Shown here piece by piece: positions 8,543 through 29,860 of a stretch of DNA of 64,000 nucleotides. Each line of letters opens with the position of its first letter. The first letter of the stretch is position 1. Under the pieces are notes generated by a model, which saw only the letters and a program-made list of their open reading frames with translations, had not been told where the DNA came from and did no database searches. A program made the translations under genes and the position numbers. The stretch is taken from the IMG/VR virus record IMGVR_UViG_3300036715_004471, positions 1 to 64,000 of that record; one strand, given 5' to 3'.

Positions 8543-10075
8543 TTATCCCTTTACCGTACACAACGGCATTAGTTTGGCAACAACTCTAGCAATACCAGCT
8601 TCCTCAACTGAGTTGATAACCGGAGTAATAGGCTTGTATGCGTAAGGAGCTTCTTCTTTGACTCTCTCCTTATACTTAGCCATGATGTCTTTTCTCATTT
8701 GCATCTGAGGAGATTTTGGATCCACAGATGTTACAATTCTCAATTCACTGGTTTGTTCATCGAAAATCTTATCAGAAACATGAGAGGCTTCTCCTCTTGG
8801 CATGATTCTGCCAGCTCCATGACAAGCACTCTCCAAAGCATCTGGATTACCCAAACCAGTCAATAGATAACTAGCGCTACCCATAGATCCAGGAATGATA
8901 ACAGGTTTACCAATCCACTTGTCTTCTCTATCTGGACCTTCTGCGGGAGTGGCTCCTTTGCGATGAATGAAGCTATCGCCCTTCTCAAAAACCAAATTGT
9001 GAGGAGCATCGTACACCAAACGAGCATCAACCTCAGATTTGATGACTTCTTGAATGGCTTTAATAGCCATCAACCCAAGAAACAATCTATTAACAAAAGC
9101 AAAATTTGCCGCATTTCTCATGCTGTTAAGATAAAAAATTCCTTCTTTTGCGTGCTCACCAATTGTTGGCAATACGAAAAAGTCATTCTTGGGAATTTTA
9201 ATTCCTTTAGGAAAGATTTCACGGGCACGATCAACGAAGTGCCATCCAACAGCATGACCCAAACTAACAGAGCCAGAATGAATCATGATTGCCAGATTAC
9301 CAGTATTGATATTCAACTCCATAGCAGTTTGCTTACAAAGAATCTCCTCAATCTTCTGGAACTCCACAAAATGATTACCACCCCCGACAGAACCAATCTG
9401 CGGGTCACGACCATCTTTGTTGCCAGAAGACTGGATCAATTTTTCAAAACCAAACAAACGGGTAGTATCGAAACCACCACCGTTGTGTGCTTTATCAAGA
9501 TCGTCTAGCTGAGCATTGGGATTAAAGAACTTATAAATACCAACCCCGGCATTATCTTCGCAAGTTTCCAATAGTCCTGGAAGACCATAACGAAGAACAG
9601 CCTCTCGTTGGCGAGGAGACATGGGAATATCTCTTTGACCTTGGAAGAAGATTTCTCTGAGGCGTTTCTGAATAGCGCCCCAATGCTCATCCAATTTAGA
9701 AACAGGAATATCCGTTACTAACAAACGCATACCACAACAGATATCATTACCAATAGCAGAAGGAATAACGAACCCTCTGTTTTCTACCACGGTTCCAATA
9801 GGAATGCCAGAACCTTTATGGAAGTCAGGGGTCAAAGCAACCTTTCTAATTCCGACATTTTGGTCGCCGAAAAAAGAAAAATTTCCGGACTTCTCTCCAG
9901 AGAGAATGTCGGAAATTGCGCGTTGAACATCTAGAAAATCGAAAAGCTCTTGAAATGCATCTCTATCAATTGCCACCTCTTCATTGGCGAAGAGTTTGAC
10001 GTCTAGATGCAAATTGTTATTGATTTGGCAGCAAGAACTAGAAATTCTATTAACTGACCATTCTGCGTTATACAT
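8543..10075 (-). CDS. rtcB: RtcB family RNA ligase
   Basis: PDFHKG, DICCGM, GGGNHFVE, HSGS, HN, HRKGAT, PGSMG, HGAGR, EEAPYAYK, VKG end. Confidence 0.95.
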   Translation of the reverse strand: MYNAEWSVNRISSSCCQINNNLHLDVKLFANEEVAIDRDAFQELFDFLDVQRAISDILSGEKSGNFSFFGDQNVGIRKVALTPDFHKGSGIPIGTVVENRGFVIPSAIGNDICCGMRLLVTDIPVSKLDEHWGAIQKRLREIFFQGQRDIPMSPRQREAVLRYGLPGLLETCEDNAGVGIYKFFNPNAQLDDLDKAHNGGGFDTTRLFGFEKLIQSSGNKDGRDPQIGSVGGGNHFVEFQKIEEILCKQTAMELNINTGNLAIMIHSGSVSLGHAVGWHFVDRAREIFPKGIKIPKNDFFVLPTIGEHAKEGIFYLNSMRNAANFAFVNRLFLGLMAIKAIQEVIKSEVDARLVYDAPHNLVFEKGDSFIHRKGATPAEGPDREDKWIGKPVIIPGSMGSASYLLTGLGNPDALESACHGAGRIMPRGEASHVSDKIFDEQTSELRIVTSVDPKSPQMQMRKDIMAKYKERVKEEAPYAYKPITPVINSVEEAGIARVVAKLMPLCTVKG

Positions 10076-10545: not shown

Positions 10546-10632
10546 TGGTAGCGCTGGTGGGACTCGAAACCACACGCCCACAAGGGGCAACGGATTTTAA
10601 GTCCGTAGTGTCTGCCATTCCACCACAGCGCC
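10546..10632 (-). tRNA. tRNA-Leu(UAA)
   Basis: GGCGCTG/CAGCGCT acceptor, ACGGA-CTTAAAA-TCCGT anticodon arm, long variable arm, TTCGAGT loop, encoded CCA. Confidence 0.93.
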
Positions 10633-11250: not shown

Positions 11251-11880
11251 CTATTTATTCTTTCGATTTTTTATTTCTTGTTTTATATCTTGCTTAAGTG
11301 CCTTGATAATATTCTCCGTCTGTGACAAAGAATATTCTTTCGAACCAGATGTATCAATAAAGAAATCACTTACCAATTTCTTATCTTCTAAAGACATCTG
11401 TGAGTTGATGCGATCCCAAGCTTCTTTTTGAGAAAGATTATTGCGTTTCACCAATCTTTCAACTTGAATGCTAGTCGGGCACCCCACCAAAATCAAGGGG
11501 CGGAATTTATCAGCCATTCCACGTTCGATAATAATGGCAGCATCATATCCAGCCATTTCAACTCCATTTTTAGATAGAAGATCGAACTGTTGTCTAGCAG
11601 CTTCTTCAATCAATGGGCTCATAATGGCAGTTACATGAGCTAATACTTCTTTTTGTGCAAAAGCCCACTTGCCAAAGTTAACACGATCCAATTTGCCATC
11701 CGGCAATAACCAGCGGCTTCCAAACTCTTCAATGAATGTTTTGAGACCAATGGAACCAGGCTCAATAACCTGTCTAGCCAAAAGGTCCGCATCAACCATA
11801 GGAACACCATGGTTTTTGAAAGTATTAGAAACAGTGCTCTTTCCAGAAGCAATTCCGCCGGTTAAGCCAAAGATAAGCAT
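11251..11880 (-). CDS. coaE: dephospho-CoA kinase
   Basis: GLTGGIASGKSTV, VDADLLAR, LDR, QVERLVKRN, RINSQM. Confidence 0.92.
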   Translation of the reverse strand: MLIFGLTGGIASGKSTVSNTFKNHGVPMVDADLLARQVIEPGSIGLKTFIEEFGSRWLLPDGKLDRVNFGKWAFAQKEVLAHVTAIMSPLIEEAARQQFDLLSKNGVEMAGYDAAIIIERGMADKFRPLILVGCPTSIQVERLVKRNNLSQKEAWDRINSQMSLEDKKLVSDFFIDTSGSKEYSLSQTENIIKALKQDIKQEIKNRKNK

Positions 11881-14449: not shown

Positions 14450-14634
14450 GATCTAAGGATAATATCCTTGTTGCAGTTGGGGCATACAATCCATTCCCGA
14501 CCATCGGGACCGCCGCTATAGTCTGTGCCATGATATTCTTTAACATCATTTAAGACATAAGCGATTGTATGACCACAACTATAGCATACCGTCTGTTTTT
14601 CCTTTAGGGGAATTTCTTTAAGAACACGTGCCAT
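14443..14634 (-). CDS. small Zn-ribbon protein
   Basis: CYSCG...CPNC. Confidence 0.65.
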   Translation of the reverse strand: MARVLKEIPLKEKQTVCYSCGHTIAYVLNDVKEYHGTDYSGGPDGREWIVCPNCNKDIILRSW

Positions 14635-14635
14635 A

Positions 14636-14941
14636 TTATCTCCTTACCCACCCAATGGATAATACAATTCTTCGTTTAGATACTTTTTCCACACTATGTG
14701 GCATAATATCTGGACGAAAGAACTTTACCCTACCACATGAAAAGATAGTTTCTCCAAGAAACTTATCCTCCCCATATAGAAGAAGATTTATTCTGAAATG
14801 ACAGAATCCGGGCACAGGATCCACATGGATGGGAATATGTGAATCGGGCGGATAATCTATCAGATAGCAATCAAAAGATTTTCCAACCAATAGTTTTAGT
14901 TTTCTGTATCCGGTTTCTTGCCTACCAACTTCCCACTTCAT
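14636..14941 (-). CDS. 2OG-Fe(II) oxygenase/cupin-like protein
   Basis: HVD...HSV...RIVLS motif spacing. Confidence 0.7.
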   Translation of the reverse strand: MKWEVGRQETGYRKLKLLVGKSFDCYLIDYPPDSHIPIHVDPVPGFCHFRINLLLYGEDKFLGETIFSCGRVKFFRPDIMPHSVEKVSKRRIVLSIGWVRR

Positions 14942-14986
14942 GAACTCATACGAGCGTAAACGCTAGCCGTAAACACATTGAGGGCA

Positions 14987-15217
14987 CTACATCCTAGGAA
15001 TCTTAGTTGTTTCGTCGTATGAAGGTTTCACTGCCAAACTTATTTGGTGCAAGACTCTTGTCATGCCCAATTCAGATTCTTTTGATCTTAACTTCATCTG
15101 AGTTACAGTTAATTTGTTGTGCAATTTATCGTTGTCACGCATCAAGCGCCTAACAATTACTACGAAATATAACACGATCATTACTAGAACAATACCTAGT
15201 GTTATTGTTATTTGCAT
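14987..15217 (-). CDS. membrane-anchored hypothetical protein
   Basis: Start MQITITLG; N-terminal TM then coiled coil. Confidence 0.6.
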   Translation of the reverse strand: MQITITLGIVLVMIVLYFVVIVRRLMRDNDKLHNKLTVTQMKLRSKESELGMTRVLHQISLAVKPSYDETTKIPRM

Positions 15218-15231
15218 AAATCCTTTATAGG

Positions 15232-15303
15232 TGGTTCCAAAGGGAATCGAACCCTTATAGCCGGGGTTAGAATCCGGCGCCCTAGCCGTTGGACGATGGA
15301 ACC
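15232..15303 (-). tRNA. tRNA with CUA anticodon (amber suppressor type)
   Basis: GGTTCCA/TGGAACC acceptor, GTCC/GGGC D stem, CCGGA-TTCTAAC-CCCGG anticodon arm, AAGGG-TTCGATT-CCCTT T arm. Confidence 0.85.
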
Positions 15304-15333
15304 GTATGCTGGACGGATCCAGCATTATAGAGA

Positions 15334-15672
15334 TCAAATCTCTCGATGGGAAGAGTATTCCTGATCATCGGTTACAAACTCCACGTGCCTGTATGTGGAT
15401 TTCGCCACATTGACTACCGGTGGAGGTGGAGGAGGAATTGGTGGTTTGGGAGCAAAAAATGCTTCCGATTTACCGAATAACCAGACTCCCGGTAGCCACA
15501 AAATGTGGTACCCGATAATCACAACAATAGCAAGTGGCCAAACCACAGACCCAATTAGTCCAAGAATCAAAACCTCTTCACTATCTAGTGATGTCCTTGC
15601 CCTCAAGAAAGGAACAACAACAAAAGCCCCAAACAATGCTACCGCTAGATAGATTATTAATAGTTCAATCAT
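15334..15672 (-). CDS. membrane protein with Pro-rich tail
   Basis: Two TM segments with WP motif. Confidence 0.65.
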   Translation of the reverse strand: MIELLIIYLAVALFGAFVVVPFLRARTSLDSEEVLILGLIGSVVWPLAIVVIIGYHILWLPGVWLFGKSEAFFAPKPPIPPPPPPVVNVAKSTYRHVEFVTDDQEYSSHREI

Positions 15673-15684
15673 GACACATGTTTC

Positions 15685-15867
15685 TCACTTGAGAATAGAT
15701 TCCCAATTCTTAACTGAGAATGGGAACAGACAAATTTGAAGGGCTGCTGCTGTTAATGCGCCGACATGCCACGTACCCAAAAGCACCACACATAGAACCG
15801 AAGTAAATAGTACGACACCGACCGTCTGGCAAAGAGCCGCCATGAAAGCTTTTGTACCAAGAGACAT
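15685..15867 (-). CDS. small membrane protein
   Basis: 60 aa hydrophobic. Confidence 0.55.
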   Translation of the reverse strand: MSLGTKAFMAALCQTVGVVLFTSVLCVVLLGTWHVGALTAAALQICLFPFSVKNWESILK

Positions 15868-15868
15868 A

Positions 15869-16267
15869 TTACGTATTCCTTAAATGTTTTGTATTTGCAA
15901 TAGTGATATGAAAACAACCAGTACCATCTGGCGGTTTTGTTAATTCGTTGGTTGCTGTCAACCCCAATTCCAATCTCAATTCTTCCAAAAACTCGCTTGA
16001 AACATTGAGCCAGAAATACATTCCATTATCAAATACAAAAGAATCATATTCAAAATCTATTTCAAGATTCTGATATTTGTTACAATATTCAATTTGAGCT
16101 GGCGTTTCGTTTCTCAAAACCGAAATATGAGAATCATACATCGGTCTCCGACATCTGTAGTATTTTGGAATTAAAGATCTATAATAATCTCCAAGCTGAT
16201 TGTCAACTTCAACAATCAATTTAAAAGGATTATTCTGATAGATCAGTCTTCCTCTGGAGGTGTGCAT
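15869..16267 (-). CDS. 2H phosphoesterase family protein
   Basis: Two HxS/T motifs: HISV and HITI about 75 aa apart. Confidence 0.7.
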   Translation of the reverse strand: MHTSRGRLIYQNNPFKLIVEVDNQLGDYYRSLIPKYYRCRRPMYDSHISVLRNETPAQIEYCNKYQNLEIDFEYDSFVFDNGMYFWLNVSSEFLEELRLELGLTATNELTKPPDGTGCFHITIANTKHLRNT

Positions 16268-19883: not shown

Positions 19884-20062
19884 ATGAACCCCACATGCTA
19901 TGATATGTAAATATTCATAGAGAGGTTCAAAAATTTTGATTTCTAAGCCCCTTTGTACCGCTATGCTTGCAAGTCCATGCTAAACAGGGAGGCTATGTTT
20001 TACAACGCGAAAACAATAAATCCGTTGCTACCAGTGGATCATATGGTATAAAATATATGTGA

Positions 20063-20254
20063 TTAGTTCTTCATGCCAGGATCCGTGTGCATGTGTCTAC
20101 TCACAACCTCTCCCAAGGCAGTGATAGAAAAGAATTCTTTATTGCCAACCACGACTCTTTTGGCAAGCCCCTTTTCAATAAGACCGTTCATTGCCTCATT
20201 GAATTCATTTTCATTCCAGTCGCCGCCCGGAAAACCAAAAAGCTTTTCATTCAT
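20063..20254 (-). CDS. small winged-helix-like protein
   Basis: LIEKGLA..FSITALG. Confidence 0.5.
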   Translation of the reverse strand: MNEKLFGFPGGDWNENEFNEAMNGLIEKGLAKRVVVGNKEFFSITALGEVVSRHMHTDPGMKN

Positions 20255-20284
20255 AATTTCATCTTCTTGTTTATCTCAAACTAT

Positions 20285-20370
<86 letters not shown>

Positions 20371-20395
20371 ACACCCACACCTTTCGATATGGATA

Positions 20396-20809
20396 TTATT
20401 TTGACTCAGTAAGATCCCTTACTCGATTGACATAGGAAGGGGACGTGCAATGACCAGCCACGTATTCCTTACATTTTTCCAAAGAGGAAGACCACTTGAT
20501 CGCTTGTACCAAGCCATTGAACACTACCTGCAAATCATGATAAGACTTACACGTAGACAGTGGAACAGTGGTGGTTTTGAAACAAAGATACCCATATTTA
20601 TTCCCGCTCTTGAGAATGTATCTCTGCATTTCAACCAGGTTTCCATGGGAGTTAACAGTTCTCACCAAGGTATCAATGACAGTAGGCGCAAGCTTGGAGA
20701 TAAGTAGCTCAAAAGAAGGCGCCGCGTTCCAAATCATCTTGGGAGCATACCCACGTCTCACTCTGCGAGGCTTCTCAAGTTTTGGAAACAGTACACGAAC
20801 ATCAGACAT
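20396..20809 (-). CDS. hypothetical protein, paralog of 20831..21304
   Basis: Shared DVxVLFP..RVRRG.AP and YGYL motifs. Confidence 0.7.
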   Translation of the reverse strand: MSDVRVLFPKLEKPRRVRRGYAPKMIWNAAPSFELLISKLAPTVIDTLVRTVNSHGNLVEMQRYILKSGNKYGYLCFKTTTVPLSTCKSYHDLQVVFNGLVQAIKWSSSLEKCKEYVAGHCTSPSYVNRVRDLTESK

Positions 20810-20830
20810 TTTATTTCTCCAAGCTGTTAG

Positions 20831-21304
20831 TTAAATGCCTAGCTCTCGCGCAGGAAGACCATTCGATGGGTTCTGCGCAGGCTCTTCAGGTTTGGGTATA
20901 AATTTTTCACGAAGCCTCTTCATGAAGTCTCCGTTATTAATTCTTGCCGTTGGTTTATTGGTATGAATACCAATCAACTCATCCAACGAACTATGCCAGT
21001 CGGGAGAGATGCAAATATCATCGTAAAGATATTGCAACTCCCTGTAATTGTTATATGAATTGGCAAGCGGATAATCTTTATCATCCACAAGCTTGAGATA
21101 ACCGTAGGAATTTTCTCTTTGAAGAAGATAGAAAAAAACAATCGTTCTATTCTCTTCCAGCTTCTCGGTGAAAAGAATTTTATGTGCTGCACTTACCATT
21201 TCATCAAATGTAGGCGGCACAATAAATTTACGGGGCGCTCGCCCTCGTCGTACTCTTTGCGTACGCTCTCTTCCAGGAAAGAGAACTTTTACGTCTGTTG
21301 ACAT
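20831..21304 (-). CDS. hypothetical protein, paralog of 20396..20809
   Basis: Same N-terminal motif. Confidence 0.7.
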   Translation of the reverse strand: MSTDVKVLFPGRERTQRVRRGRAPRKFIVPPTFDEMVSAAHKILFTEKLEENRTIVFFYLLQRENSYGYLKLVDDKDYPLANSYNNYRELQYLYDDICISPDWHSSLDELIGIHTNKPTARINNGDFMKRLREKFIPKPEEPAQNPSNGLPARELGI

Positions 21305-21305
21305 T

Positions 21306-21818
21306 TTATCTTTCCTTACAATTACAGGGATAACTAGGTTTCTTCTGACCGTTTGTTACCGTACATTTACGATTGCCATACTTACAATGACGATGGATAG
21401 CACAGCAATGCTCCGTATGAACATCCTTCTTATTGGCATCAAGGAAGAGCGGCTCAACCACTGGGGCGCCAGTTATAGAAGTCGACGGAGGGGCGACAGT
21501 TACAATTGACGTACTAATCACCTTACCACTCTCGTAAGTAGTTGCGATCATCTCGTCTGAATCACTATCATCGCCAGCATTAGCGAATGCCTTCATGCAA
21601 TGCTCGAACCAATCCGATGCTAGCTTTCTGGCATATTCAACAGTGGCACGATTAAGATCATTGTTATGCTCCAGCACATCTGCCAAAGAATATTTTCCAT
21701 CCTCAGTTTGAAACCACCACCTCAAACCAGCAGCACTGAAAGAGATAATAGTATCAACCTCTGCGCAAGAGAAAACAATTGATTCCGCGAACGCAATTTG
21801 AAAGATAGTCTTTTCCAT
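21306..21818 (-). CDS. hypothetical protein with Cys/His-rich C-terminus
   Basis: DVHTEHCCAIHRHCKYG..C..YPCNC. Confidence 0.65.
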   Translation of the reverse strand: MEKTIFQIAFAESIVFSCAEVDTIISFSAAGLRWWFQTEDGKYSLADVLEHNNDLNRATVEYARKLASDWFEHCMKAFANAGDDSDSDEMIATTYESGKVISTSIVTVAPPSTSITGAPVVEPLFLDANKKDVHTEHCCAIHRHCKYGNRKCTVTNGQKKPSYPCNCKER

Positions 21819-21853
21819 GTCTTGTCTTTCGCAAGAGAGGTTGATGGGTAGGT

Positions 21854-22843
21854 TTACTCAAACAGATCGGAAACCGATCCACACCGATGAATTCTTTCAA
21901 TCGCCACACGCAGCATCATCGCACAAGATACAACTCTAATCTTTGCGGAAGCCTTAGCTTCCGCAGAAAGCGGAATAGAATCTGATACGATTACTTCTGA
22001 TAGTAGGGACTCATTGATTCTTTGAATTGCCGGACCAGAAAGTACCGCGTGTGTTGCGCATCCAATAACTTGGTTTGCACCAGCCTTCATTAGAGCGTCC
22101 CCGGCTTGACATAGAGTTCCAGTAGTGTCAATGATATCATCAACCAAGATACAATTCTTGTCAGCAATATCGCCGATGATATGCATTACTTCTGATTCGT
22201 TTGGTTTGTCTCTACGCTTGTCGATAATAGCTAGTCCACAACCACCAAGCTTTTTGGCAAAGTTTCTGGCTCGCTTTACACCACCAACATCAGGTGAAAC
22301 AACGACAGTATTGTGAGGTTGCCAATCTTTATAGTTATGAGAAAGATCGTAGCACAAGAACGGCGCGGACTGAAGGTTGTCGAACAGAGGAGTTTCAAAG
22401 AATCCCTGAATCTGGGTAGAATGAACATCCAGAATAGCAACTCTATCAACGCCAGACTTGATAATCAAACCGCTTACCAACTTCGCAGTGATGGGTGTCC
22501 TCGGCGCAACCTGTCTATCTTGACGAGCATATCCATAGTAAGGAATAACTGCGGTCACAGAATCGGCAGCTGCTCTCTTCAAAGCATCTGCCATAATGCA
22601 CATCTCCATAATATTGTCGTTATGGGGCGCACAGGTAGACTGCAAAATATAGCAATCCATTCCTCTGACAGATTCTTTGATGGAGAAGAATGTCTCTCCA
22701 TCAGAAAAATGACTAATGACACCCTGACCTCGTGTCGGTGGAGCCGGAAAACCAACCAGCTTATCCACCTCATGATAATCAAAGAATTTATCGAAAAGCT
22801 CCGGATTGGAGCGTCCCACGAAAACCCTGATGTCACTATTCAT
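21854..22843 (-). CDS. prs: ribose-phosphate pyrophosphokinase
   Basis: FSDGE, PYYGYARQDR, DVHSTQIQGFF, VVSPDVGGVKRA, DKRR, DDIIDT. Confidence 0.95.
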   Translation of the reverse strand: MNSDIRVFVGRSNPELFDKFFDYHEVDKLVGFPAPPTRGQGVISHFSDGETFFSIKESVRGMDCYILQSTCAPHNDNIMEMCIMADALKRAAADSVTAVIPYYGYARQDRQVAPRTPITAKLVSGLIIKSGVDRVAILDVHSTQIQGFFETPLFDNLQSAPFLCYDLSHNYKDWQPHNTVVVSPDVGGVKRARNFAKKLGGCGLAIIDKRRDKPNESEVMHIIGDIADKNCILVDDIIDTTGTLCQAGDALMKAGANQVIGCATHAVLSGPAIQRINESLLSEVIVSDSIPLSAEAKASAKIRVVSCAMMLRVAIERIHRCGSVSDLFE

Positions 22844-22844
22844 A

Positions 22845-23915
22845 TTATCTTCCATTCTGATGAGACCAGCCAGAATCAATCTCCAGATCTAAATCCCTGG
22901 CGATACAAGGCAAATAGATAGTAGAAATATGTTCCAATTCTGACATGTTAGAAGCCGTTCTCAAATCATGTGAACCGTATTCGCCAAGAGATATAACGTA
23001 TCCGGGATCTCTCAAATCACCGTAAATTCCATTATGTTGATAGCCTTTGCTATAATCACGATCTTGACCCATGTTAAAACCGCGGGCTCGGTAATACTCT
23101 AGGCTTGGTCGCTGAGGATATTGCGAATGATCATCTGCCAATTCCTCATGAGATTCCACCCGGTCCAGCACAGTCTTTACGAAATCATCTGGAGACATAC
23201 CGCCTTCCTTCTGACCTCGTAGAAGCACATTGTTCAGCTGTGTTTTGGTGAGCTTGCCGGCAACCAACTCTCTCAGTTCATTTACGTAATTATCATGAGC
23301 CTGATGCGTTCTCTTCTCATTGAGAATCATATCAATGTGCTCAAAATCTTTTCCTAGAACCTTGGCGTAAAGCTCTTGAATATCTTCCACCCGCCACTTG
23401 CCCTGTGTTGATTCGTAGCTCCTCCAAATTCTTCTAACGTGGAAGTGATGTCGTTCTCTATCGTATCTAGCAGTAGGCATCTGCGTGTACACGTACATGT
23501 AATCGCGACATTGATTGGTATGAATTATCACTTTAGTGTTAGGGTTCGCGGCTGGAAGCCAGAACACATCGCCATCGGCGTCTCCATACATCAAAGAGTT
23601 TTCTTCATCATGACCTTTATCTACTAAGGCTTGATGAATAGCCACCACATGAGGAATCATGATCTTTTTGACAACCAAAGTCCAATAAGCATCAATGTCC
23701 CAATTCAAATAAAGAGAGCCACAGGTCTGTTCAAAATATTTTTTGGCAAAAGCTTCTCGAGCTTTATCTTCATCTGAAGAGTGTCGATCTTCCCAAGACT
23801 CATCCTCGAAAAATTCAAATGGTTCCTGAACCATTTGAGCAGAGTTGAATGGCTCTTTTCTTTTTTGTTCCAACTGCTTAATGGCAAGTTTTGCCAATAA
23901 CTCTTCTCTCTTCAT
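22845..23915 (-). CDS. hypothetical protein
   Basis: 356 aa ORF. Confidence 0.7.
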   Translation of the reverse strand: MKREELLAKLAIKQLEQKRKEPFNSAQMVQEPFEFFEDESWEDRHSSDEDKAREAFAKKYFEQTCGSLYLNWDIDAYWTLVVKKIMIPHVVAIHQALVDKGHDEENSLMYGDADGDVFWLPAANPNTKVIIHTNQCRDYMYVYTQMPTARYDRERHHFHVRRIWRSYESTQGKWRVEDIQELYAKVLGKDFEHIDMILNEKRTHQAHDNYVNELRELVAGKLTKTQLNNVLLRGQKEGGMSPDDFVKTVLDRVESHEELADDHSQYPQRPSLEYYRARGFNMGQDRDYSKGYQHNGIYGDLRDPGYVISLGEYGSHDLRTASNMSELEHISTIYLPCIARDLDLEIDSGWSHQNGR

Positions 23916-23918
23916 GAA

Positions 23919-24722
23919 TCAATCCTCGTCGTCAAAATCTTCATCATCCTCATCGTCATTGTCATCGTCGATGGAATCGTTTTCCTTATCCCCAAGATGA
24001 TAAGGAAACATACCATATTCAACCACGGAGTGGTGAATGATAGTATCGTGTTCTCTTCCATTGAAGTCCAAATATTTGGTAGCTTCTTTACCAAAGACCT
24101 CAAACATCATCTTCGCTTGTTCAGCGGACAGCGAGGTAACAGTGAAGCACTCCAGAAAATCTTTCTTGTTTCTGTATTCACAGGCTTCATTGGTTCCAAA
24201 GCCCGCATGAATTCTTTTCATGGGAACTCGATTTTGCCAAGTCTCCCACTCTTGAACGGTAAAGATTCTAAAACCGTCCACATCAAACTCATCGGCATAG
24301 TTATCGGCATACTTCACCAAAACATAATCAACGCCTTCAAAAAGCAAAGGCGTCGTAGTCTCTGTCCGAGGCTTACGCTTGGCGAGATACTGCTGATAAA
24401 GAATTTCCGCCGAAGCAATCTTTCGGTCAAACAGTTTCATAAACTTGCCCTTGATTGATCCAAAGGTCAACTCAGTATATCTGGCGCTATCTTTCCACCA
24501 ACGATACTGTTCCGATTGCTTCAACTCATCATTCAACAGATGAACATTACTGTAGTAACTTGGAACTTTGGCGATGATTCTAACCAAATCTTCCACATAT
24601 CCGAGCTCAATGCGATGGTCGGCGTAATCCATGATTACTAGAACCTGCTCTTCAAAAGCAGGCTCTTCAAGGATTCTTTTCGCCTCTTGGTAATGTTCTA
24701 GATACAGATGATCGCCGCTCAT
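23919..24722 (-). CDS. hypothetical protein with acidic tail
   Basis: 267 aa; NYADEFDVDGF, FGTNE. Confidence 0.7.
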   Translation of the reverse strand: MSGDHLYLEHYQEAKRILEEPAFEEQVLVIMDYADHRIELGYVEDLVRIIAKVPSYYSNVHLLNDELKQSEQYRWWKDSARYTELTFGSIKGKFMKLFDRKIASAEILYQQYLAKRKPRTETTTPLLFEGVDYVLVKYADNYADEFDVDGFRIFTVQEWETWQNRVPMKRIHAGFGTNEACEYRNKKDFLECFTVTSLSAEQAKMMFEVFGKEATKYLDFNGREHDTIIHHSVVEYGMFPYHLGDKENDSIDDDNDDEDDEDFDDED

Positions 24723-24725
24723 GAT

Positions 24726-24959
24726 TTACTTAGTTCTCTTGAGAGTTATTTCGATTCCGCCAGAAAGATAGACTGTTACAGTTTCGCCAATTTGCATATG
24801 CCTAGGAATAGAAACGCTCTCAGTCTCTCGTTCTCTTGGGGCACTGTAATCGTATGACGTCTTACCAGATGCTTTATCGTAAGGACAGTCGCCCAGATAC
24901 GCGTGTTCGTGCCCACACATGTAGCAATAATATCCAATCATTCTTCTTCTCCCGGACAT
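24726..24959 (-). CDS. small Cys/His protein
   Basis: CYMCGHEH..CP. Confidence 0.55.
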   Translation of the reverse strand: MSGRRRMIGYYCYMCGHEHAYLGDCPYDKASGKTSYDYSAPRERETESVSIPRHMQIGETVTVYLSGGIEITLKRTK

Positions 24960-25135
24960 GGATCGTCGGGATATCTGACCCCACCATATCCAACGCTTCC
25001 AAAAGCATGAGCCCCACAGACCGTACAGATATCATCAACGCTACTATTAGTATCAATGATCCAGTTGTGAGCTCTGCGCTCTTTTGGCTCAACAGGAGCC
25101 AAATGACTCTCGATATTCATTTCTCTCCCGGACAT
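24938..25135 (-). CDS. small Zn-finger-like protein
   Basis: HNW..DDICTVCG..GVRYP..CPGE. Confidence 0.6.
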   Translation of the reverse strand: MSGREMNIESHLAPVEPKERRAHNWIIDTNSSVDDICTVCGAHAFGSVGYGGVRYPDDPCPGEEE

Positions 25136-25455
25136 GAAGCGAAGGGATACATTACCCCCTCTTCATCATAGTAAGGTGCAACGTAGCCACACCTAACACA
25201 AATCTCATCCAGAGAATCAGGAGAGTCGACCGACGTCCAAAGATGATCGGGATCTGATTTGTTTTGATCATGATATTCTTCGATCACGATCGAAACTTTG
25301 TATGCGCCCGAACCATTCGGCAACTTGGGAATTGCTAAATCTACAAATGCTTTTCCAACACTACCATGATAGTGATAGTCGGGATCATCCTCATACCATC
25401 CCATATCACGGCAGTCAAACCTTACTATATCCGTATGCACAATCGGGTCCATCAA
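25117..25455 (-). CDS. protein with the same C-terminal Zn-finger-like domain
   Basis: HLW..DEICVRCG..GVMYP..CPGE. Confidence 0.6.
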   Translation of the reverse strand: MMDPIVHTDIVRFDCRDMGWYEDDPDYHYHGSVGKAFVDLAIPKLPNGSGAYKVSIVIEEYHDQNKSDPDHLWTSVDSPDSLDEICVRCGYVAPYYDEEGVMYPFASCPGEK

Positions 25456-25727
25456 ACCTTCTCCAACAAACCCGGAAGACGAGAAACGAAATCAGCATCA
25501 ATAGTGCTGACGGCTTCTCTACGATCCTTTTCGGTATCCGAAGGAAGAGAAACTAAATGTTTGCGCAAGCACTCTTCCAAATCTTCTTTGGCAAGTCGAA
25601 GACCAATGGCTTTGGTTTCTTCAACAGCCAATTTCTTTTTGAGATCATTGGTTCGAAGTTTGGAACCAGCCAATCTCTCACTCAACCCGGCGATATCTTC
25701 ACGCAAGCGCTTCTCTTTATCATCCAC
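25452..25727 (-). CDS. coiled-coil hypothetical protein
   Basis: 91 aa with GAGG RBS. Confidence 0.6.
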   Translation of the reverse strand: MDDKEKRLREDIAGLSERLAGSKLRTNDLKKKLAVEETKAIGLRLAKEDLEECLRKHLVSLPSDTEKDRREAVSTIDADFVSRLPGLLEKV

Positions 25728-25735
25728 AATTCACC

Positions 25736-25921
25736 TCATTTGGGCAACATGTCAAGGTCTTCCGACGAAGACAGAACTGGAATCGTAGTGATCTCAAACT
25801 CTTCGCCTTCCCAAAACACCTTGTCAAGATGTGCCTTGGTCAATTCAGCCATAGCCGCATTCTCACAGGCTACAACATAATTGGGGTACGATTTACTGGT
25901 GAGTACAATTACGGTTCCCAT
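25736..25921 (-). CDS. hypothetical protein
   Basis: 61 aa ORF. Confidence 0.5.
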   Translation of the reverse strand: MGTVIVLTSKSYPNYVVACENAAMAELTKAHLDKVFWEGEEFEITTIPVLSSSEDLDMLPK

Positions 25922-26071
25922 GTTACCCTATCTTTTGGGATTGGAGTTAAAATTTCCAGCTTTTTAATCATTGCGTGCATATGCACACATGCTGAGATAG
26001 AGGCTGGGTAAACTATCTATATTTGCCATTACGCGTGGCGCGCCACTAGCTTTTGTGAAAAGCTAGAAAAC

Positions 26072-26359
26072 TCAAGCCGACTTCGGCGCTACTTCAATCA
26101 CCTTGCTAAGCAAACCGGGAGCCACGGTCCACTGCATACCTGCATCAGTTACCACCTTGGCGTTCTTGCGGTTAATGCCGAGGAACTTTCCACGAATGGT
26201 GCCGCGCTTGGACTCAAACTGCACAGTCTCTCCGAGGCGGAAAGACATGCCGTTCTCGGCGCCCAACTGATCAAATCGTAGCCTAACCATTGCATTCATT
26301 GCGGTCAGGTCTTCGCGAGAAGCAGTGCGGATCTAAGTCCTCACATCTTCAAAGGTCAC
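26072..26359 (-). CDS. SH3-like hypothetical protein with in-frame TAG at codon 9
   Basis: GTG overlapping upstream TGA, MTFEDVRT*IRTASREDLTA then the 75-aa ORF (FRLGETVQF..WTVAPGLL). Confidence 0.6.
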
Positions 26360-26580
26360 TTCGACACCCCATTCGCTTCCATCCACAGACGCATGCCCTC
26401 ATCCGTGGCATTGATCTCGGAAACGATCTCGAATCCGCGCCCAACCTCCACGTTCTCGTAGAAGCCGGTCTCTTCATCCTGAACCCAGCCGAAGTATACC
26501 TTGTCACGGGTCGCCGTAACAATCTTGTTCGTCTTCTCACCCGGCGCACTCATCTTACCAGTTATTGCACAACGAAACAT
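26356..26580 (-). CDS. hypothetical protein
   Basis: MFRCAITG..GFEIVSE; AGGA RBS. Confidence 0.65.
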   Translation of the reverse strand: MFRCAITGKMSAPGEKTNKIVTATRDKVYFGWVQDEETGFYENVEVGRGFEIVSEINATDEGMRLWMEANGVSK

Positions 26581-26638
26581 TTTTTTGTTTCCTATTCTAT
26601 CAATTATGATATATGTTTATGTAAGGAGTTACATAAAC

Positions 26639-27304
26639 ATGAAAAATTCAAAAGATACTTCTCAAGAAAGATTTTGGAAAAAAGTAACCAAAGCTTTGGA
26701 AAATGAATGTTGGCTTTGGACGGGATGTAAACAAGGCAGCAATGGTTACGGGTATTTCCGAATTAGTAAAGATGCTGGTAACCAAGTCGCTCACCGTTTT
26801 TCGTATGAACTTCACAAGGGGCAAATTCCGATGGGAATGATTGTTTGCCACACCTGCGATAACCCTATTTGCGTTAATCCTAATCATCTGTTTGTGGGAA
26901 CACATCAGGATAACGCCATCGACCGAGAATCAAAAAAAAGAAGTGATTATTCTAAAATCACTAAACTCACTGAAAAACAAGCTCAAGAAATTAAATCTTC
27001 TAATTTATCACAAAGTAGTTTATCCAAACTATATAAAGTAAGTAGAAGAACTATAGCTTCAATCCAATGCGGAGAGACGTGGAAGCACGTACGCACACAT
27101 ATTCAAGTAACTTCGTCTACCGAATATGTTTGTGTCGTTTGTAACAATTCATGTACAAAAACGATTTACAAAGATAATGGGTATAAATATCGAAAGATTC
27201 GTGATGATGTATGTTTGCGTTGCAATAAAGCTTTGGCTCTATTAAATAATGATTTACAAAATTTAATTAGAGCCAAAACCTATCTGGAGACTAATCTGGT
27301 TTAA
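26639..27304 (+). CDS. HNH homing endonuclease
   Basis: CWLWTG..GYG..AHRFSY..VCHTCDNPICVNPNHL; AAGGAG RBS. Confidence 0.9.
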   Translation: MKNSKDTSQERFWKKVTKALENECWLWTGCKQGSNGYGYFRISKDAGNQVAHRFSYELHKGQIPMGMIVCHTCDNPICVNPNHLFVGTHQDNAIDRESKKRSDYSKITKLTEKQAQEIKSSNLSQSSLSKLYKVSRRTIASIQCGETWKHVRTHIQVTSSTEYVCVVCNNSCTKTIYKDNGYKYRKIRDDVCLRCNKALALLNNDLQNLIRAKTYLETNLV

Positions 27305-27487
27305 TCAAATAAACTCCGGTGGAAATAAATCCACTACAACGTGGACTAATTCGACGTGTGTACTTATCCGTCCAAATATGCCGACCATTTACAAGTCGGC
27401 ATCCCTGTCTTCCAGACATTTCATTGTAACTGTCATTATGATCTTGCTGTGATGCCACGACAGTTTTGTTATTCTCCAATGAATTCA

Positions 27488-28882
27488 TCAGTAGATGATT
27501 TTGTTTTCGAACTTGTGACTGCCGAACTTTTCGTTGATGGTACGCCACACATTTTTACCATCACCCTCCGAATGCTCAATCCATTTTCCATTCATGGTCC
27601 AAGCAGTGGTCATGTCGCCAAGGTCATTTACCAAGGTGCCGATACCATTTTGGAAAACATCCCAGATGATATCTCTTGCTTTTGCCGGGGGAATGTCGCT
27701 TGACAGATCAGGCACGCCAGCAGCTGCACCGCCATTGCAAATTGGCCAAGCCGCCTGAAACAACTTCATCATGATATCTTTGTTTCTATTCATGATGGCG
27801 CGAGACTTATCAACATCCAAATCCATCATACAGGAAATGACTTCATCTTCGGATGTGTCCCAGAATTTTCCAAGATCCTTCTTACCCAGAATGACACACT
27901 TGCGCGCAAAATCATACACCAAGTTAGCAACCATCGGATGAATTAACCAGGAATTACTCAGAGCATGATATTCAAGCCCTGAACCAGTGACCTTGTAATC
28001 ACCGGGCAGGCTTCCCAGTTTGCTGTAATCTGGATGATTATATCCGTTCAGCAAAGACACGCACGCGCATCCAAGCGTAGCATCCAACACTTTGGTGATC
28101 GATGATGCTCTCTCATCTGAGAGCCCGCGGAAATCATAAAGATGAAATTGAATTGCTCCACGAGCGGTACGATATCTGATCGTTTTAGCATCAGGGCACC
28201 TCGAACTTGCGCTATCAATTCTCTTGATACCGTAAGCGTTCTTAATATCTGAACCAATTCCAAACGCAAGAGTCTGAACGTCAGCCTCCGCAAGCTGCTT
28301 GTCAGACAAAACCATTACTGATTTGTTGGAGATTCTTGCCTTGGGATCAACCTTTCGAGCCGAGGCATACATGTCATGCAGTCCAAATGCCATCGAATCA
28401 ATGGCGCGGGCGAGGCAAACACAAGAGGCGGTCTGAACTGCACCGCCAAATCCAATGCGAGATGCTGTCACCTTACCATCATAACCCGGAGACTTAACCT
28501 GATCTTTCGCAATGAGAAACGTAGCGGGGACGCAAGCGCCATTCTCATCCTCCAAAAAGAATTCTCCCATAGCGGCATTGTCACCGTTATGATCTAATTC
28601 ATTGTGAAGATTCGAAAATCTATGTTTATCCCTAGCAGCAACGTGTTCAACCATTTCAGAGTCATCAAGAACGGTCAAGGCGGCGTCGTCAACAAGATAG
28701 TTGGCATACGACGTACCATCGAGGTACGTTACTGTCACGTAAATTTCATCGTGACCGTAATCTTGAATGGACGTAACCAAAACGGTATCATGGGCAAACT
28801 TACCTTTGTTCGCCAGCTTGACACCAATGTTGCGACGATTCTTAACCCAATCGTTCACCAACTCACGTGCGTTCGTAATCAT
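27488..28882 (-). CDS. degenerate phiEco32-like COOH-NH2 ligase paralog
   Basis: Aligns by eye to 62749..63993 (NAYG, LDATLGCACVSL, LPGDYK, LEYHALSNSWL) but lacks several catalytic residues. Confidence 0.75.
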   Translation of the reverse strand: MITNARELVNDWVKNRRNIGVKLANKGKFAHDTVLVTSIQDYGHDEIYVTVTYLDGTSYANYLVDDAALTVLDDSEMVEHVAARDKHRFSNLHNELDHNGDNAAMGEFFLEDENGACVPATFLIAKDQVKSPGYDGKVTASRIGFGGAVQTASCVCLARAIDSMAFGLHDMYASARKVDPKARISNKSVMVLSDKQLAEADVQTLAFGIGSDIKNAYGIKRIDSASSRCPDAKTIRYRTARGAIQFHLYDFRGLSDERASSITKVLDATLGCACVSLLNGYNHPDYSKLGSLPGDYKVTGSGLEYHALSNSWLIHPMVANLVYDFARKCVILGKKDLGKFWDTSEDEVISCMMDLDVDKSRAIMNRNKDIMMKLFQAAWPICNGGAAAGVPDLSSDIPPAKARDIIWDVFQNGIGTLVNDLGDMTTAWTMNGKWIEHSEGDGKNVWRTINEKFGSHKFENKIIY

Positions 28883-29022
28883 GTTTTTGTTCCCTTACTT
28901 TCTGATGAAGATGGTTGTCTGATGGGAGGGTCCAGCCCTCCCCAGACTTTTCTATTCTGTGTTATGATCCTGACGCTTACGTCTTACTTAGATCTCGAGC
29001 CCCTGAGTCCCGGAATCTTTTG

Positions 29023-29049
29023 AGGGAAGCAAGCCGTGCTTGCTTCCCT
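29023..29049. other. 12-bp intergenic hairpin
   Basis: agggaagcaagc-cgt-gcttgcttccct. Confidence 0.55.
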
Positions 29050-29161
29050 GTACGTGAACATACATCTCACCAACTCTATCTCTCAGATCATTGATTTTTG
29101 TTCTGCGATATACTAACCTATCTCCCGGAAAGTAATCTCTTACTATGTCTCTTCGTTGCTA

Positions 29162-29650
29162 TCACTTCGCTGGCGTAGTAGCGCTAGCAGTCTTCTTCGA
29201 CTTGCGCTTGGCGCTCTTGGTCGCGGAACGCTCCGCAGCCACTCGCACCTTATTGCTCTCCGAACGGGAAGCGTCGCAAGCCCCAAGCTTGTTGGCAAAC
29301 CAGTTCTTAGCCAAGTCGCTGTCGTCACGTGCCAGGCGACGGGCAAACTCCTTGAGACTCAAACTGTTGTCACTCTTGGCGTGAAGAGCCTTGATAGAAC
29401 GAGAAACGGAAATCTTATCTTTGCTCATGATCTGTTCCTTTGCACTCGGGAGTTGATCCCGATTCAGATGTGGGTTTGACATCTCAACCATCCGAAATTC
29501 TCCGGTATAAATTGATGTCTTACAAATCCGACAATCACAATACTGATACTCTGTATTATAACGATCAGAAAACTTTTCACCTTCCCAGCGGAAGGTTTTG
29601 AATTCAGATGCGTGTGAACACGCGCGCCTCTCTAACGATGCTTCTGCCAT
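29162..29650 (-). CDS. basic hypothetical protein (possible internal start at 29428)
   Basis: K/A/S-rich C-terminus; AAAGGA before MSKDK. Confidence 0.6.
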   Translation of the reverse strand: MAEASLERRACSHASEFKTFRWEGEKFSDRYNTEYQYCDCRICKTSIYTGEFRMVEMSNPHLNRDQLPSAKEQIMSKDKISVSRSIKALHAKSDNSLSLKEFARRLARDDSDLAKNWFANKLGACDASRSESNKVRVAAERSATKSAKRKSKKTASATTPAK

Positions 29651-29662
29651 AAACTGATTCTC

Positions 29663-29860
29663 TCAGTTCTTGTCAGAAACTTCGGGGTCGCAATTCATCA
29701 TGCGACGCACGTAATCATCAACCGTCCAGCCGCACGACTCAACGAAACCGCGCAGAAGATTACAATGATCTTCCATAGCAGTTTCATTTCGATAATCAAT
29801 TTGAACGCTCCAGAGTTTTTCCATCTCCAAAGCCACAAGTTCGTACGACACTCTTTTCAT
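29663..29860 (-). CDS. hypothetical protein
   Basis: 65 aa, AAGGA RBS. Confidence 0.6.
   Translation of the reverse strand: MKRVSYELVALEMEKLWSVQIDYRNETAMEDHCNLLRGFVESCGWTVDDYVRRMMNCDPEVSDKN

What the first reader, a model, noticed from the sequence alone, without database searches (positions are those of the whole stretch)
15232..15303. Amber suppressor-type tRNA (CUA) in a genome that still uses TAG as stop
Seen: intact cloverleaf with loop TT-CTA-AC and one A:C mismatch closing the anticodon stem; 3' end ACC without the final A. Genes such as 407..850 end in TAG with the next gene starting immediately, so there is no global recoding. Known: CUA tRNAs occur in large phages, with and without code reassignment. 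Inference: selective or timed readthrough.
Basis: partly seen in the sequence, partly recalled or inferred. Interest (0 to 1): 0.6.

Follow-up and report, generated by a model that had tools for sequence, protein, structure and literature searches.

The report
Extra amber-suppressor tRNA in huge phage
A 446-kb phage from microbial mats carries an intact tRNA that reads the stop codon TAG, beside a second such tRNA and its own release factor 2, and it has almost purged TAG from its gene ends without using TAG inside genes, which fits a state already described for phages on the way to a changed genetic code.

Summary
The tRNA is real. It lies on the minus strand at 15303..15232, has anticodon CUA and scores 55.5 bits against Rfam tRNA, mid-range among the genome's 55 tRNAs. 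The same sequence stands in contigs of two metagenome runs, so the anticodon is not an assembly error.

The general point holds, because the genome reads as standard code. Treating TAG as sense adds at most 2% coding density, and no gene shared with two 430-450 kb relatives carries an in-frame TAG.

- The window is the start of a 446,541-bp virus record.
- That record has a second tRNA(CUA) at 320.8 kb, conserved in both relatives.
- It encodes release factor 2, present in four relatives, plus a CCA-adding-like enzyme and a TyrRS.
- TAG ends only 6 of 332 low-GC ORFs.

The window tRNA has no ortholog in the relatives. Its acceptor stem, D-arm and 4-nt variable loop match the clade's tRNA-Glu(CUC).

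Best reading: a functional, lineage-specific second amber suppressor inside a kit that neutralises TAG. I found no conserved readthrough target in the phage. This is a new member of a known kind, of moderate interest.

The parts
15232..15303 (-). tRNA gene with anticodon CUA (positions 34-36 = 15270..15268). It has a canonical cloverleaf, a 4-nt variable loop, an A31:C39 mismatch and discriminator A73. C74 and C75 follow at 15231..15230; the terminal A is not encoded.
   Evidence: ARAGORN. Rfam RF00005, 55.5 bits, full length. Fold z -2.96. Identical in contigs of runs X1 and X2.
15324..15352 (-). Sigma-70-like promoter match, TTCCCA-17 nt-TATAAT (10 of 12). It ends 21 nt upstream of the tRNA 5' end.
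   Evidence: It is the only such site in 14600..15900. Shuffles give a mean of 3 sites, so only its position is suggestive. Function is inferred.
15306..15325 (-). Inverted repeat ATGCTGGA / TCCAGCAT with loop TCCG, lying between the -10 box and the tRNA 5' end. It may be a leader or processing hairpin.
   Evidence: Read directly from the sequence. Not tested.
11251..11880 (-). Dephospho-CoA kinase gene that ends in a genuine TAG stop (11253..11251). Suppression here would fuse it to the next, same-frame 118-codon ORF.
   Evidence: Pfam CoaE at 163.7 bits, profile positions 2-177 of 180. The downstream ORF is a separate gene in G001 and G002.
8543..10075 (-). RtcB RNA ligase. It places the suppressor in a tRNA and RNA-repair neighbourhood.
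   Evidence: Pfam RtcB, 311 bits. 81% identical ortholog in G001.
10546..10632 (-). tRNA-Leu(UAA), on the same strand as the suppressor.
   Evidence: ARAGORN. Rfam 51.8 bits.
20285..20370 (-). tRNA-Leu(UAA), on the same strand as the suppressor.
   Evidence: ARAGORN. Rfam 56.7 bits.

Best explanation
The feature is an intact amber-suppressor tRNA that is probably expressed. Its body is of the tRNA-Glu type.

It is a lineage-specific second copy within a kit that this clade of huge phages carries. The kit comprises a conserved tRNA(CUA) and a phage release factor 2, plus a CCA-adding-like enzyme found here in this genome.

Proposed mechanism (each step after the first is inferred):
1. The gene is transcribed from its own promoter-like site.
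2. The transcript is trimmed, and the missing 3' A is added by the phage or host nucleotidyltransferase.
3. A host synthetase charges it, most likely with Glu or Gln. The phage TyrRS is a weaker candidate.
4. The charged tRNA competes with host RF1 at UAG.

The phage's own genes are insulated from this. They end in TAA or TGA, which the phage RF2 serves, and TAG has almost been purged from gene ends.

UAG is therefore close to unassigned for the phage. Readthrough falls on host or rival-phage genes that end in TAG, and in-frame TAG codons become tolerable. This matches the published pre-recoding state.

Shown: the tRNA, its twin, RF2, TAG depletion and the absence of recoding. Inferred: expression, charging, suppression and the physiological role.
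For: The tRNA is sound.
- Every standard pair is present except 31:39, and it ranks 24th of 58 Rfam tRNA hits in the genome.
- Read from the sequence, the conserved tertiary positions are intact: U8, A14, G18-G19, A21, U33, A37, the T-loop UUCGA, and an A15:U48 pair.
- A promoter-like site lies 21 nt upstream.
- The sequence is identical in two runs.
- A different 24.8-kb contig at about five times the depth carries a copy with 8 of 72 differences. None of the listed differences falls in the anticodon, A31:C39 is swapped to C31:A39, and the flanks are unrelated.

The kit.
- A second tRNA(CUA) lies at genome 320811..320884 (Rfam 61.9 bits).
- It has orthologs in the same synteny in G001 (89% identity) and G002 (77%). 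These genomes share only 79-83% identity in the large terminase.
- RF2 lies at genome 131157..132305 (TIGR00020, 417 bits against a cut-off of 370). The SPF and GGQ motifs are visible in the translation.
- RF2 is conserved in G001 (76%), G002 (57%), G003 and G007. No second RF-1-domain gene is present.
- A PolyA_pol-family enzyme lies at 260626..261018.

Insulation of the phage's own genes.
- Low-GC ORFs end in TAA 206, TGA 120 and TAG 6 times. TAG against TGA departs from the all-frame trinucleotide ratio at p = 1e-17.
- Among 207 ortholog pairs with G001, which has one CUA tRNA, TAG ends 3 genes here and 14 there. Discordant pairs are 2 against 13, p = 0.007.

Standard code.

Glu-type body.
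- 21 of the first 25 nt match G001's tRNA-Glu(CUC).
- It has the same acceptor strand GGTTCCA, U8-C9, the GGCTA D-loop, a 4-nt variable loop and A73.

Literature.
- The model of low GC, then rare TAG, then gain of a suppressor tRNA, then in-frame stops, together with RF2 in TAG-recoded phages, is described in bioRxiv 10.1101/2021.08.26.457843.
Against: - There are no expression, charging or suppression data. No RNA run holds the stretch.
- The window tRNA has no ortholog in G001 or G002, so no conservation speaks for it within the clade. The syntenic slot in G001 holds other ORFs.
- The A31:C39 mismatch and C38 are not the classical efficient amber-suppressor context (my own knowledge, not tested).
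- About 21 ORFs still end in TAG. These include CoaE 4 kb away, where readthrough would add 118 residues. This would be costly if suppression were efficient.
- The promoter match is no more than chance gives for the region.
- The link between the number of CUA tRNAs and TAG depletion rests on three genomes.
- The amino acid cannot be read from the sequence. Whole-sequence similarity puts Asp, Arg, Gln, Trp and Glu tRNAs within 67-72%.
Confidence: 0.55

Rival explanations
1. Programmed, selective or timed readthrough. The tRNA exists to extend particular phage proteins that end in TAG, giving two isoforms or late-phase variants.
For: - A few phage ORFs end in TAG and are followed by same-frame coding sequence. 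In the GC-rich part, 9 TAG sites have coding signal on both sides, against 15 TAG-terminated ORFs. This share is higher than for TAA (9 of 40) or TGA (12 of 58).
- CoaE-TAG is followed at once by a same-frame 118-codon ORF with no obvious Shine-Dalgarno sequence.
Against: - Nearly all such sites have a start codon within 13 codons, often with an AGGAG or AAGGA box.
- Pfam domains are complete on one side of the TAG (CoaE; NTPase_I-T).
- The ORF after CoaE is a separate gene at other places in G001 and G002.
- The one TAG stop conserved with G001 has no same-frame continuation there.
- The two remaining candidates (genome 101943 and 117173) are weak. The one I translated in its own frame (117173) looks like an off-frame product. 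The 101943 stretch was translated in the wrong frame, so it rests only on its short 52- and 50-codon arms.
- TAG stops are being lost, not kept.
Confidence: 0.1
2. Hidden partial recoding. TAG is a sense codon in a small set of lineage-specific genes, for example ORFans of the GC-rich 20-130 kb segment next to the tRNA, which comparison with relatives cannot reveal.
For: - All TAG sites with coding signal on both sides lie in 11-126 kb.
- The genome has the hallmarks of TAG-recoded phages: two CUA tRNAs and RF2.
- In relative G002 an HNH-type gene has an in-frame TAG at a conserved Trp, followed by 25 conserved codons that run to the same C-terminus.
Against: - Reading TAG as sense raises density only from 0.768 to 0.780 in that segment and by 1-2% elsewhere.
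- The codon-model test leaves 0 credible in-frame TAG in the low-GC 340 kb and 2 weak ones in the GC-rich part.
- No TAG interrupts any gene shared with G001 or G002.
Confidence: 0.08
3. Inactive or decaying paralog. It is a duplicated tRNA-Glu(CUC)-like gene whose anticodon mutated C36 to A, and it is not charged or not used. The CUA is an accident carried in a variable region.
For: - It has no ortholog in G001 or G002.
- It carries a mismatch at the base of the anticodon stem.
- CCA is incomplete, while the neighbouring tRNA-Leu genes encode it in full.
- GluRS normally reads position 36 (my own knowledge), so a Glu body with CUA may be a poor substrate.
Against: - All other stems and conserved tertiary positions are intact, and the score is mid-range for the genome.
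- A homolog in another genome of the same mats shows no listed change in the CUA anticodon despite 8 changes elsewhere. Its 31:39 pair is swapped A:C to C:A rather than repaired or degraded.
- 31:39 mismatches also occur in the conserved CUA tRNA and in all three tRNA-Trp of the clade, so they are not a sign of decay here.
- This genome has fewer TAG stops than G001, as expected if suppression is stronger.
Confidence: 0.17
4. Pyrrolysine tRNA (ARAGORN's label). UAG would be read as Pyl.
For: Only the CUA anticodon and the program's label.
Against: - No PylS in the genome.
- The tRNA has the canonical D-loop with G18-G19, the canonical T-loop, a 5-position anticodon stem and a 4-nt variable loop. 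It lacks the compact tRNA-Pyl architecture (the tRNA-Pyl features are my own knowledge).
Confidence: 0.01

Closest known systems
Suppressor tRNAs of stop-codon-recoded phages (TAG to Gln, code 15: crAss-like, Lak, Agate and others)
   Same: A phage-encoded tRNA(CUA) in a low-GC, tRNA-rich large phage. A phage-encoded RF2 sits alongside it, as reported for TAG-recoded Lak and Agate phages (bioRxiv 10.1101/2021.08.26.457843; PMC13037316).
   Different: This genome and its relatives G001 and G002 read as standard code. They have no in-frame TAG in shared genes and no density gain with TAG as sense. The tRNA body is Glu-like rather than Gln-like.
Standard-code relatives of recoded phages that have gained a suppressor tRNA (the 'pre-recoding' state in the Borges et al. 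model)
   Same: Low GC content, a rare target stop codon, a suppressor tRNA present, and essentially no in-frame stops yet (for the model; here).
   Different: - The published example is a TGA suppressor in an Agate phage; here the target is TAG.
- There are two unrelated CUA tRNAs.
- The kit (one CUA tRNA plus RF2) is conserved across genomes that share only 79-83% terminase identity. That looks like a stable state rather than a brief intermediate.
Laboratory amber suppressors derived from tRNA-Glu or tRNA-Gln (supE-type; engineered tRNA-Glu(CUA))
   Same: A one-base anticodon change (CUC or CUG to CUA) on an otherwise normal class I tRNA. The anticodon arm CCGGA-UUCUAAC-CCCGG resembles the E. 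coli tRNA-Gln arm (my own recollection; a lead only).
   Different: This one is natural and phage-borne. It has G1-C72 and A73 rather than the U1-A72 and G73 of tRNA-Gln, and an A31:C39 mismatch. The amino acid it inserts is unknown.

Membership tests
tRNA (Rfam RF00005) | Full-length match to the covariance model above the gathering score | tested here: met
   55.5 bits against a cut-off of 29, model positions 1-71 of 71, E 3e-9. Ranks 24th of 58 hits in the genome.
tRNA (Rfam RF00005) | Cloverleaf with the conserved tertiary nucleotides (U8, A14, G18-G19, U33, T-loop) | tested here: met
   Read from the alignment and the sequence. The fold returns the cloverleaf. A31:C39 is the only non-standard pair.
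Amber suppressor tRNA | Anticodon CUA in a 7-nt loop, preceded by U33 and followed by a purine at position 37 | tested here: met
   Loop U32 U33 C34 U35 A36 A37 C38. The sequence is unchanged in contigs of runs X1 and X2, and no difference in the anticodon is listed for the diverged homolog.
Amber suppressor tRNA | Is aminoacylated and inserts an amino acid at UAG | not testable with these tools
   Needs an amber reporter, tRNA charging assays or proteomics. No RNA run holds the locus.
TAG-recoded (code 15) phage | In-frame TAG codons inside conserved genes | tested here: not met
   tblastn among G000, G001 and G002 finds no TAG inside genes of this genome, and one case in G002. The codon-model junction test agrees.
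TAG-recoded (code 15) phage | Clear gain in coding density or gene length when TAG is read as sense | tested here: not met
   Density changes: 0.916 to 0.938, 0.768 to 0.780 and 0.862 to 0.872 in the three parts of this genome. No gain in G001 or G002.
TAG-recoded (code 15) phage | Accessory machinery: tRNA(CUA), and RF2 without RF1 | tested here: met
   Two tRNA(CUA) genes. prfB at 417 bits with the SPF motif, and only one RF-1-domain gene in the genome.
tRNA-Glu-derived tRNA | Acceptor stem, D-arm, 4-nt variable loop and discriminator like the clade's tRNA-Glu | tested here: met
   21 of 25 5' nucleotides match G001's tRNA-Glu(CUC), with the same acceptor strand, the GGCTA D-loop, a 4-nt variable loop and A73. 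However, the T-arm matches G001's tRNA-Asp, and whole-sequence identity does not separate isotypes.
tRNA-Glu-derived tRNA | Charged by GluRS | not testable with these tools
   No isotype-specific models are on hand. The phage has no Glu/GlnRS and its only class Ib synthetase is a TyrRS.
tRNA-Pyl | PylS partner and the compact tRNA-Pyl architecture | tested here: not met
   No PylS. The D- and T-loops are canonical.

The most novel reading that the evidence does not exclude
This clade of huge phages keeps a suppressor tRNA and RF2 as a stable weapon or firewall rather than as a step toward its own recoding. During infection UAG stops terminating. That corrupts host, defence-system or rival-phage proteins whose genes end in TAG, while the phage's own genes (TAA and TGA ends, served by phage RF2) are immune. 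The window tRNA would be a second suppressor with a different identity, horizontally shared among phages of the same mats, that strengthens the effect and has driven a further purge of TAG stops in this lineage.
Probability: 0.2. Interest if true: 0.7.

Novelty: new member of a known kind. Interest (0 to 1): 0.45.

Why it matters
Phage-borne suppressor tRNAs are usually discussed as tools for reading the phage's own recoded genes. Here the full toolkit is present: two CUA tRNAs, RF2 and a CCA-adding-like enzyme. One CUA tRNA and RF2 are conserved across a clade of 430-450 kb phages that still read as standard code and have nearly emptied TAG from their gene ends.

If the tRNAs are active, the clade is a natural example of an almost unassigned stop codon. 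It offers a way to test two ideas: whether suppression is aimed at the host or at competitors, and whether gaining a suppressor drives loss of that stop codon. The comparison of 3 against 14 TAG stops among 207 orthologs hints at the second.

It also offers natural CUA tRNAs with unusual 31:39 mismatches as candidates for study of suppression efficiency.

Tried and rejected
Searches for close kin of the tRNA.
- Exact-pattern scans of viral contigs found nothing.
- A 19-nt D-arm pattern in 185,579 prokaryote genomes gave 3 chance hits with no tRNA.
- The first metagenome pattern found nothing.
- The second gave 8 loci with 6 CUA tRNAs. They share only the anticodon arm that the pattern imposed and have unrelated bodies, so they are not kin.
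- Megablast of 8-20 kb against GenBank phages found nothing. The terminase has only about 24% identity to named phages.

In-frame TAG.
- A simple same-frame ORF-pair count, a codon-usage junction test, Pfam on both halves of candidates, translation of the two leftovers (the first was in the wrong frame and says nothing) and cross-genome tblastn all failed to produce a convincing case in this genome.
- TGA recoding of the GC-rich segment was considered, because density rises from 0.77 to 0.85 with TGA as sense. I rejected it because none of the 12 TGA sites with coding signal on both sides lacks a nearby start, and GC-rich DNA gives long off-frame ORFs.

Other rejected leads.
- An ochre-type tRNA(UUA) reported by ARAGORN at lowered thresholds (genome 68510) has no Rfam support.
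- No theta or HDV-like ribozyme or other Rfam family lies beside the tRNA.
- Incomplete relatives G003-G007 gave no CUA tRNA with the conserved tRNA as query. They are 47-79% complete, so this says nothing.

Procedure.
- No tool call named an alternative genetic code.
- In my own scripts TAG was either dropped from the stop set, which changes ORF boundaries only, or shown as X.

Full report
**1. The observation**

ARAGORN reports four tRNAs in the window, all on the minus strand. One lies at 15230..15303 with anticodon CTA. Rfam's tRNA model matches 15303..15232 end to end at 55.5 bits (E 3e-9). Its only non-standard pair is position 31 with 39, A opposite C. The loop reads UUCUAAC. The gene ends with discriminator A, then C-C, then T, so the terminal A of CCA is not encoded. 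The strand folds into the cloverleaf at -29.4 kcal/mol, and none of 200 shuffles folds as well.

**2. What genome this is**

The window is the first 64 kb of a single 446,541-bp virus record. The record has the following features.
- ARAGORN finds 56 tRNAs and Rfam finds 55 above its cut-off, all on the minus strand.
- It encodes a gpA-type large terminase, RtcB and two further RNA ligases, and very large genes of up to 2,369 codons.
- Composition is uneven: 39% GC in 1-20 kb, 44-61% in 20-130 kb and 31-38% in the rest.
- The stretch around the tRNA is held by microbial mat, sediment and aquatic metagenome runs.
- No named phage is close.
- IMG/VR holds relatives. I fetched two whole: G001 (432,844 bp, terminase 83% identical) and G002 (447,763 bp, 79%).

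**3. Is the anticodon real?**

Contigs of runs X1 and X2 cover the gene without a single difference.

A different 24.8-kb contig, about five times deeper and present in X1 and X2 (a shorter piece also in X3), matches only the 72 nt of the tRNA, with 8 differences. Its flanks are AT-rich and unrelated. The listed differences are A31 to C, C39 to A and C41 to U. None of the listed differences is in the anticodon.

A second genome in the same mats therefore carries a homologous CUA tRNA in which the 31:39 mismatch is swapped rather than repaired. This argues against both sequencing error and simple decay.

**4. Is TAG a stop, a sense codon, or neither?**

Among main-strand ORFs of 80 or more codons, stop use is as follows.

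| Part of genome | TAA | TGA | TAG |
|---|---|---|---|
| Low-GC | 206 | 120 | 6 |
| GC-rich | 40 | 58 | 15 |

TAG and TGA have the same base composition, yet TAG is twenty-fold rarer as a stop in the low-GC part (p = 1e-17 against the all-frame ratio).

A secure TAG stop exists 4 kb from the tRNA. The dephospho-CoA kinase gene at 11251..11880 has a complete domain and then TAG.

Five tests speak against TAG as a sense codon.
- Same-frame ORF pairs split by a single stop number TGA 53, TAA 42 and TAG 13.
- A codon-usage test for coding signal on both sides of a stop finds no credible case in the 340 kb of low-GC DNA. It finds nine in the GC-rich part. Nearly all of these have a start codon and often a Shine-Dalgarno box within 13 codons.
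- Pfam domains are complete on one side of the TAG.
- tblastn among the three genomes finds no TAG inside any shared gene of this genome.
- Treating TAG as sense raises density by 2% or less here, and not at all in G001 and G002.

The genome reads as standard code, with TAG close to unused.

**5. The rest of the kit**

- A second tRNA(CUA) lies at genome 320811..320884 (Rfam 61.9 bits, again with a 31:39 mismatch, C opposite A).
- It has orthologs in the same neighbourhood, between tRNA-Thr(GGU) and tRNA-Arg(CCU), in G001 (89% identity). G002 has an ortholog at 77%, beside tRNA-Thr(GGU), and also carries a further, unrelated CUA tRNA next to it.
- The phage encodes release factor 2 at 131157..132305 (TIGR00020, 417 bits, above the cut-off). 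The SPF and GGQ motifs are visible, and no second RF-1-domain gene is present.
- RF2 is conserved in G001 (76%), G002 (57%), G003 and G007.
- There is also a PolyA_pol-family (CCA-adding-like) gene and a bacterial-type TyrRS that G001 and G002 lack.
- There is no Glu/GlnRS and no PylS.

RF2 reads UAA and UGA but not UAG. A phage RF2 together with tRNA(CUA) is what has been reported for TAG-recoded Lak and Agate phages.

**6. The window tRNA in particular**

It has no ortholog in G001 or G002. The flanking genes are syntenic in G001, but the slot between them holds other ORFs and no tRNA.

Its first 25 nt match G001's tRNA-Glu(CUC) at 21 positions. The two share the acceptor strand, U8-C9, the GGCTA D-loop, a 4-nt variable loop and A73. 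Its T-arm and the start of the 3' acceptor strand are identical over 20 nt to G001's tRNA-Asp. Whole-sequence identity alone does not separate isotypes.

I therefore call the body Glu-type, one anticodon change (C36 to A) away from CUC. I leave the inserted amino acid open between Glu, Gln and, less likely, Tyr through the phage TyrRS. That choice rests on general knowledge of identity elements, not on a test.

A promoter-like site, TTCCCA-17-TATAAT, ends 21 nt upstream. The number of such sites in the region is no more than chance gives. No ribozyme or other known RNA lies beside the gene.

**7. Does the phage use TAG readthrough on purpose?**

I found no sign of it.
- The 118-codon ORF that follows CoaE-TAG in frame is a separate gene at other places in G001 and G002.
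- Among 207 ortholog pairs with aligned C-termini, G001 ends 14 genes in TAG and this genome 3. Thirteen G001 TAG stops are TAA or TGA here, against two the other way (p = 0.007).
- The single TAG stop shared by both is followed in G001 by 230 nt full of stops, and the next gene is in another frame.

TAG stops are being lost, not conserved. They are rarest in the two genomes with two CUA tRNAs: 1.8% here and 2.8% in G002, against 8.6% in G001. With three genomes this is a hint only.

**8. Explanation**

The best-supported reading is that the gene is a working amber suppressor, gained by this lineage on top of a clade-wide kit of tRNA(CUA) and RF2. The phage's own genes are insulated because they end in TAA or TGA.

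This is the state that Borges and colleagues proposed as the path to recoding: low GC, a rare stop codon, gain of a suppressor, then in-frame stops. One in-frame TAG has indeed appeared in G002. It sits at a conserved Trp of an HNH-type gene and is followed by 25 conserved codons that run to the same end.

Conservation of the kit across genomes this diverged, without recoding, suggests that suppression has a use of its own. It may act against host or rival genes that end in TAG. That is inference, and I give it a probability of 0.2.

The rivals are programmed readthrough of phage genes (0.10), hidden recoding of ORFans (0.08), a decayed tRNA-Glu paralog (0.17) and tRNA-Pyl (0.01).

**9. Verdict**

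- The tRNA and the absence of recoding are confirmed.
- The example gene is wrong.
- 'Selective or timed readthrough' finds no target.
- The finding is a new member of a known kind: a suppressor tRNA in a standard-code relative of recoded phages. The added points are a second suppressor, RF2 and a near-complete purge of TAG stops.
- Interest is 0.45.

Noticed in passing
genome 320811..320884 (-) = L013:16811-16884: A second tRNA(CUA), Rfam 61.9 bits, with U1-A72, G73 and a C31:A39 mismatch. Its anticodon arm is almost identical to that of the phage's tRNA-Trp(CCA). It is conserved in synteny in G001 (89% identity) and G002 (77%). G002 has a further, unrelated CUA tRNA beside it.
   Followed up: yes
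genome 131157..132305 (-) = L004:7157-8305: A phage-encoded release factor 2 (prfB, 417 bits, SPF and GGQ motifs), read as a single ORF with no frameshift. It is conserved in G001, G002, G003 and G007. No RF1 is present.
   Followed up: yes
genome 355457..356701 (-) = L015:11457-12701: A bacterial-type tyrosyl-tRNA synthetase (tyrS, 383 bits) that G001 and G002 lack. The phage's own tRNA-Tyr(GUA) is only 75 nt, with a short variable arm, which is odd for a bacterial-type TyrRS.
   Followed up: partly
window 20000..64000 and on to genome 130000: A 110-kb segment at 44-61% GC inside a 31-38% GC phage genome. Its genes and tRNAs are on the same strand as the rest, and its coding density is lower (0.77). 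G001 and G002 have smaller GC-raised segments that hold homologs of some of its genes. IMG/VR classes the record as a provirus. The origin of the segment is unexplained.
   Followed up: partly
window 55086..56105 (-): A 339-aa adenylosuccinate-synthetase homolog (Pfam 268 bits), shorter than the 416-position family profile. Phage PurZ enzymes of 2-aminoadenine genomes are short in this way. No DatZ- or MazZ-like neighbour was found by Pfam in 50.7-60 kb.
   Followed up: partly
G002 330781..331509 (+) (L124): An HNH-type gene with an in-frame TAG at 331429, where three paralogs or orthologs have Trp. It is followed by 25 well-conserved codons that end at the same C-terminus. This is either a very recent nonsense mutation or a TAG that is read through.
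   Followed up: partly
genome 154849 and 260003 (-): Two genes conserved in G001 (62% and 66% identity) carry an in-frame TAA in this genome, at positions where G001 has Gln and Glu. They may be split genes, pseudogenes or errors. Not examined further.
   Followed up: no
genome 404899..404972; G001 423057..423130; G002 130556..130630: All three tRNA-Trp(CCA) genes of the clade have a mismatch at 31:39 (C:A, U:U and C:A). Only 9 of 124 non-CUA tRNAs have one, while 3 of 5 CUA tRNAs do. Weakened anticodon stems have been linked to near-cognate stop reading, but through the top pair of the stem (PMC13092985).
   Followed up: partly
run X1, X2, X3 contig laid on window 15232..15303: A 24.8-kb contig at about five times the depth of this phage carries a tRNA 89% identical to the window tRNA (no listed difference in the anticodon, 31:39 swapped to C:A), with unrelated AT-rich flanks. 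The suppressor seems to be shared among phages of the same mats.
   Followed up: partly
genome 324754..324824 (-) = L014:754-824: A tRNA that ARAGORN misses (Rfam 41.4 bits, loop CUCGUAA, so Thr CGU). The tandem TAG-TAG at the end of the HNH-type ORF 324807..325463 lies inside it. A sub-threshold tmRNA-like match lies at L014:15-210, and G001 has a clear tmRNA at the matching place.
   Followed up: partly
window 37860..37993 (-) and 49495..49592 (-): Weak tRNA-model matches (34 and 30 bits) with long insertions. ARAGORN in intron mode calls them Ser(GCU) with a 57-nt insert and Val(CAC) with a 10-nt insert. They may be intron-bearing tRNAs or chance matches.
   Followed up: partly
window 8543..10075, 40643..41644; genome 76711..77937: RtcB and two RNA-ligase-family genes lie in the same 80 kb as the scattered tRNAs. 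This looks like a tRNA-repair repertoire.
   Followed up: no
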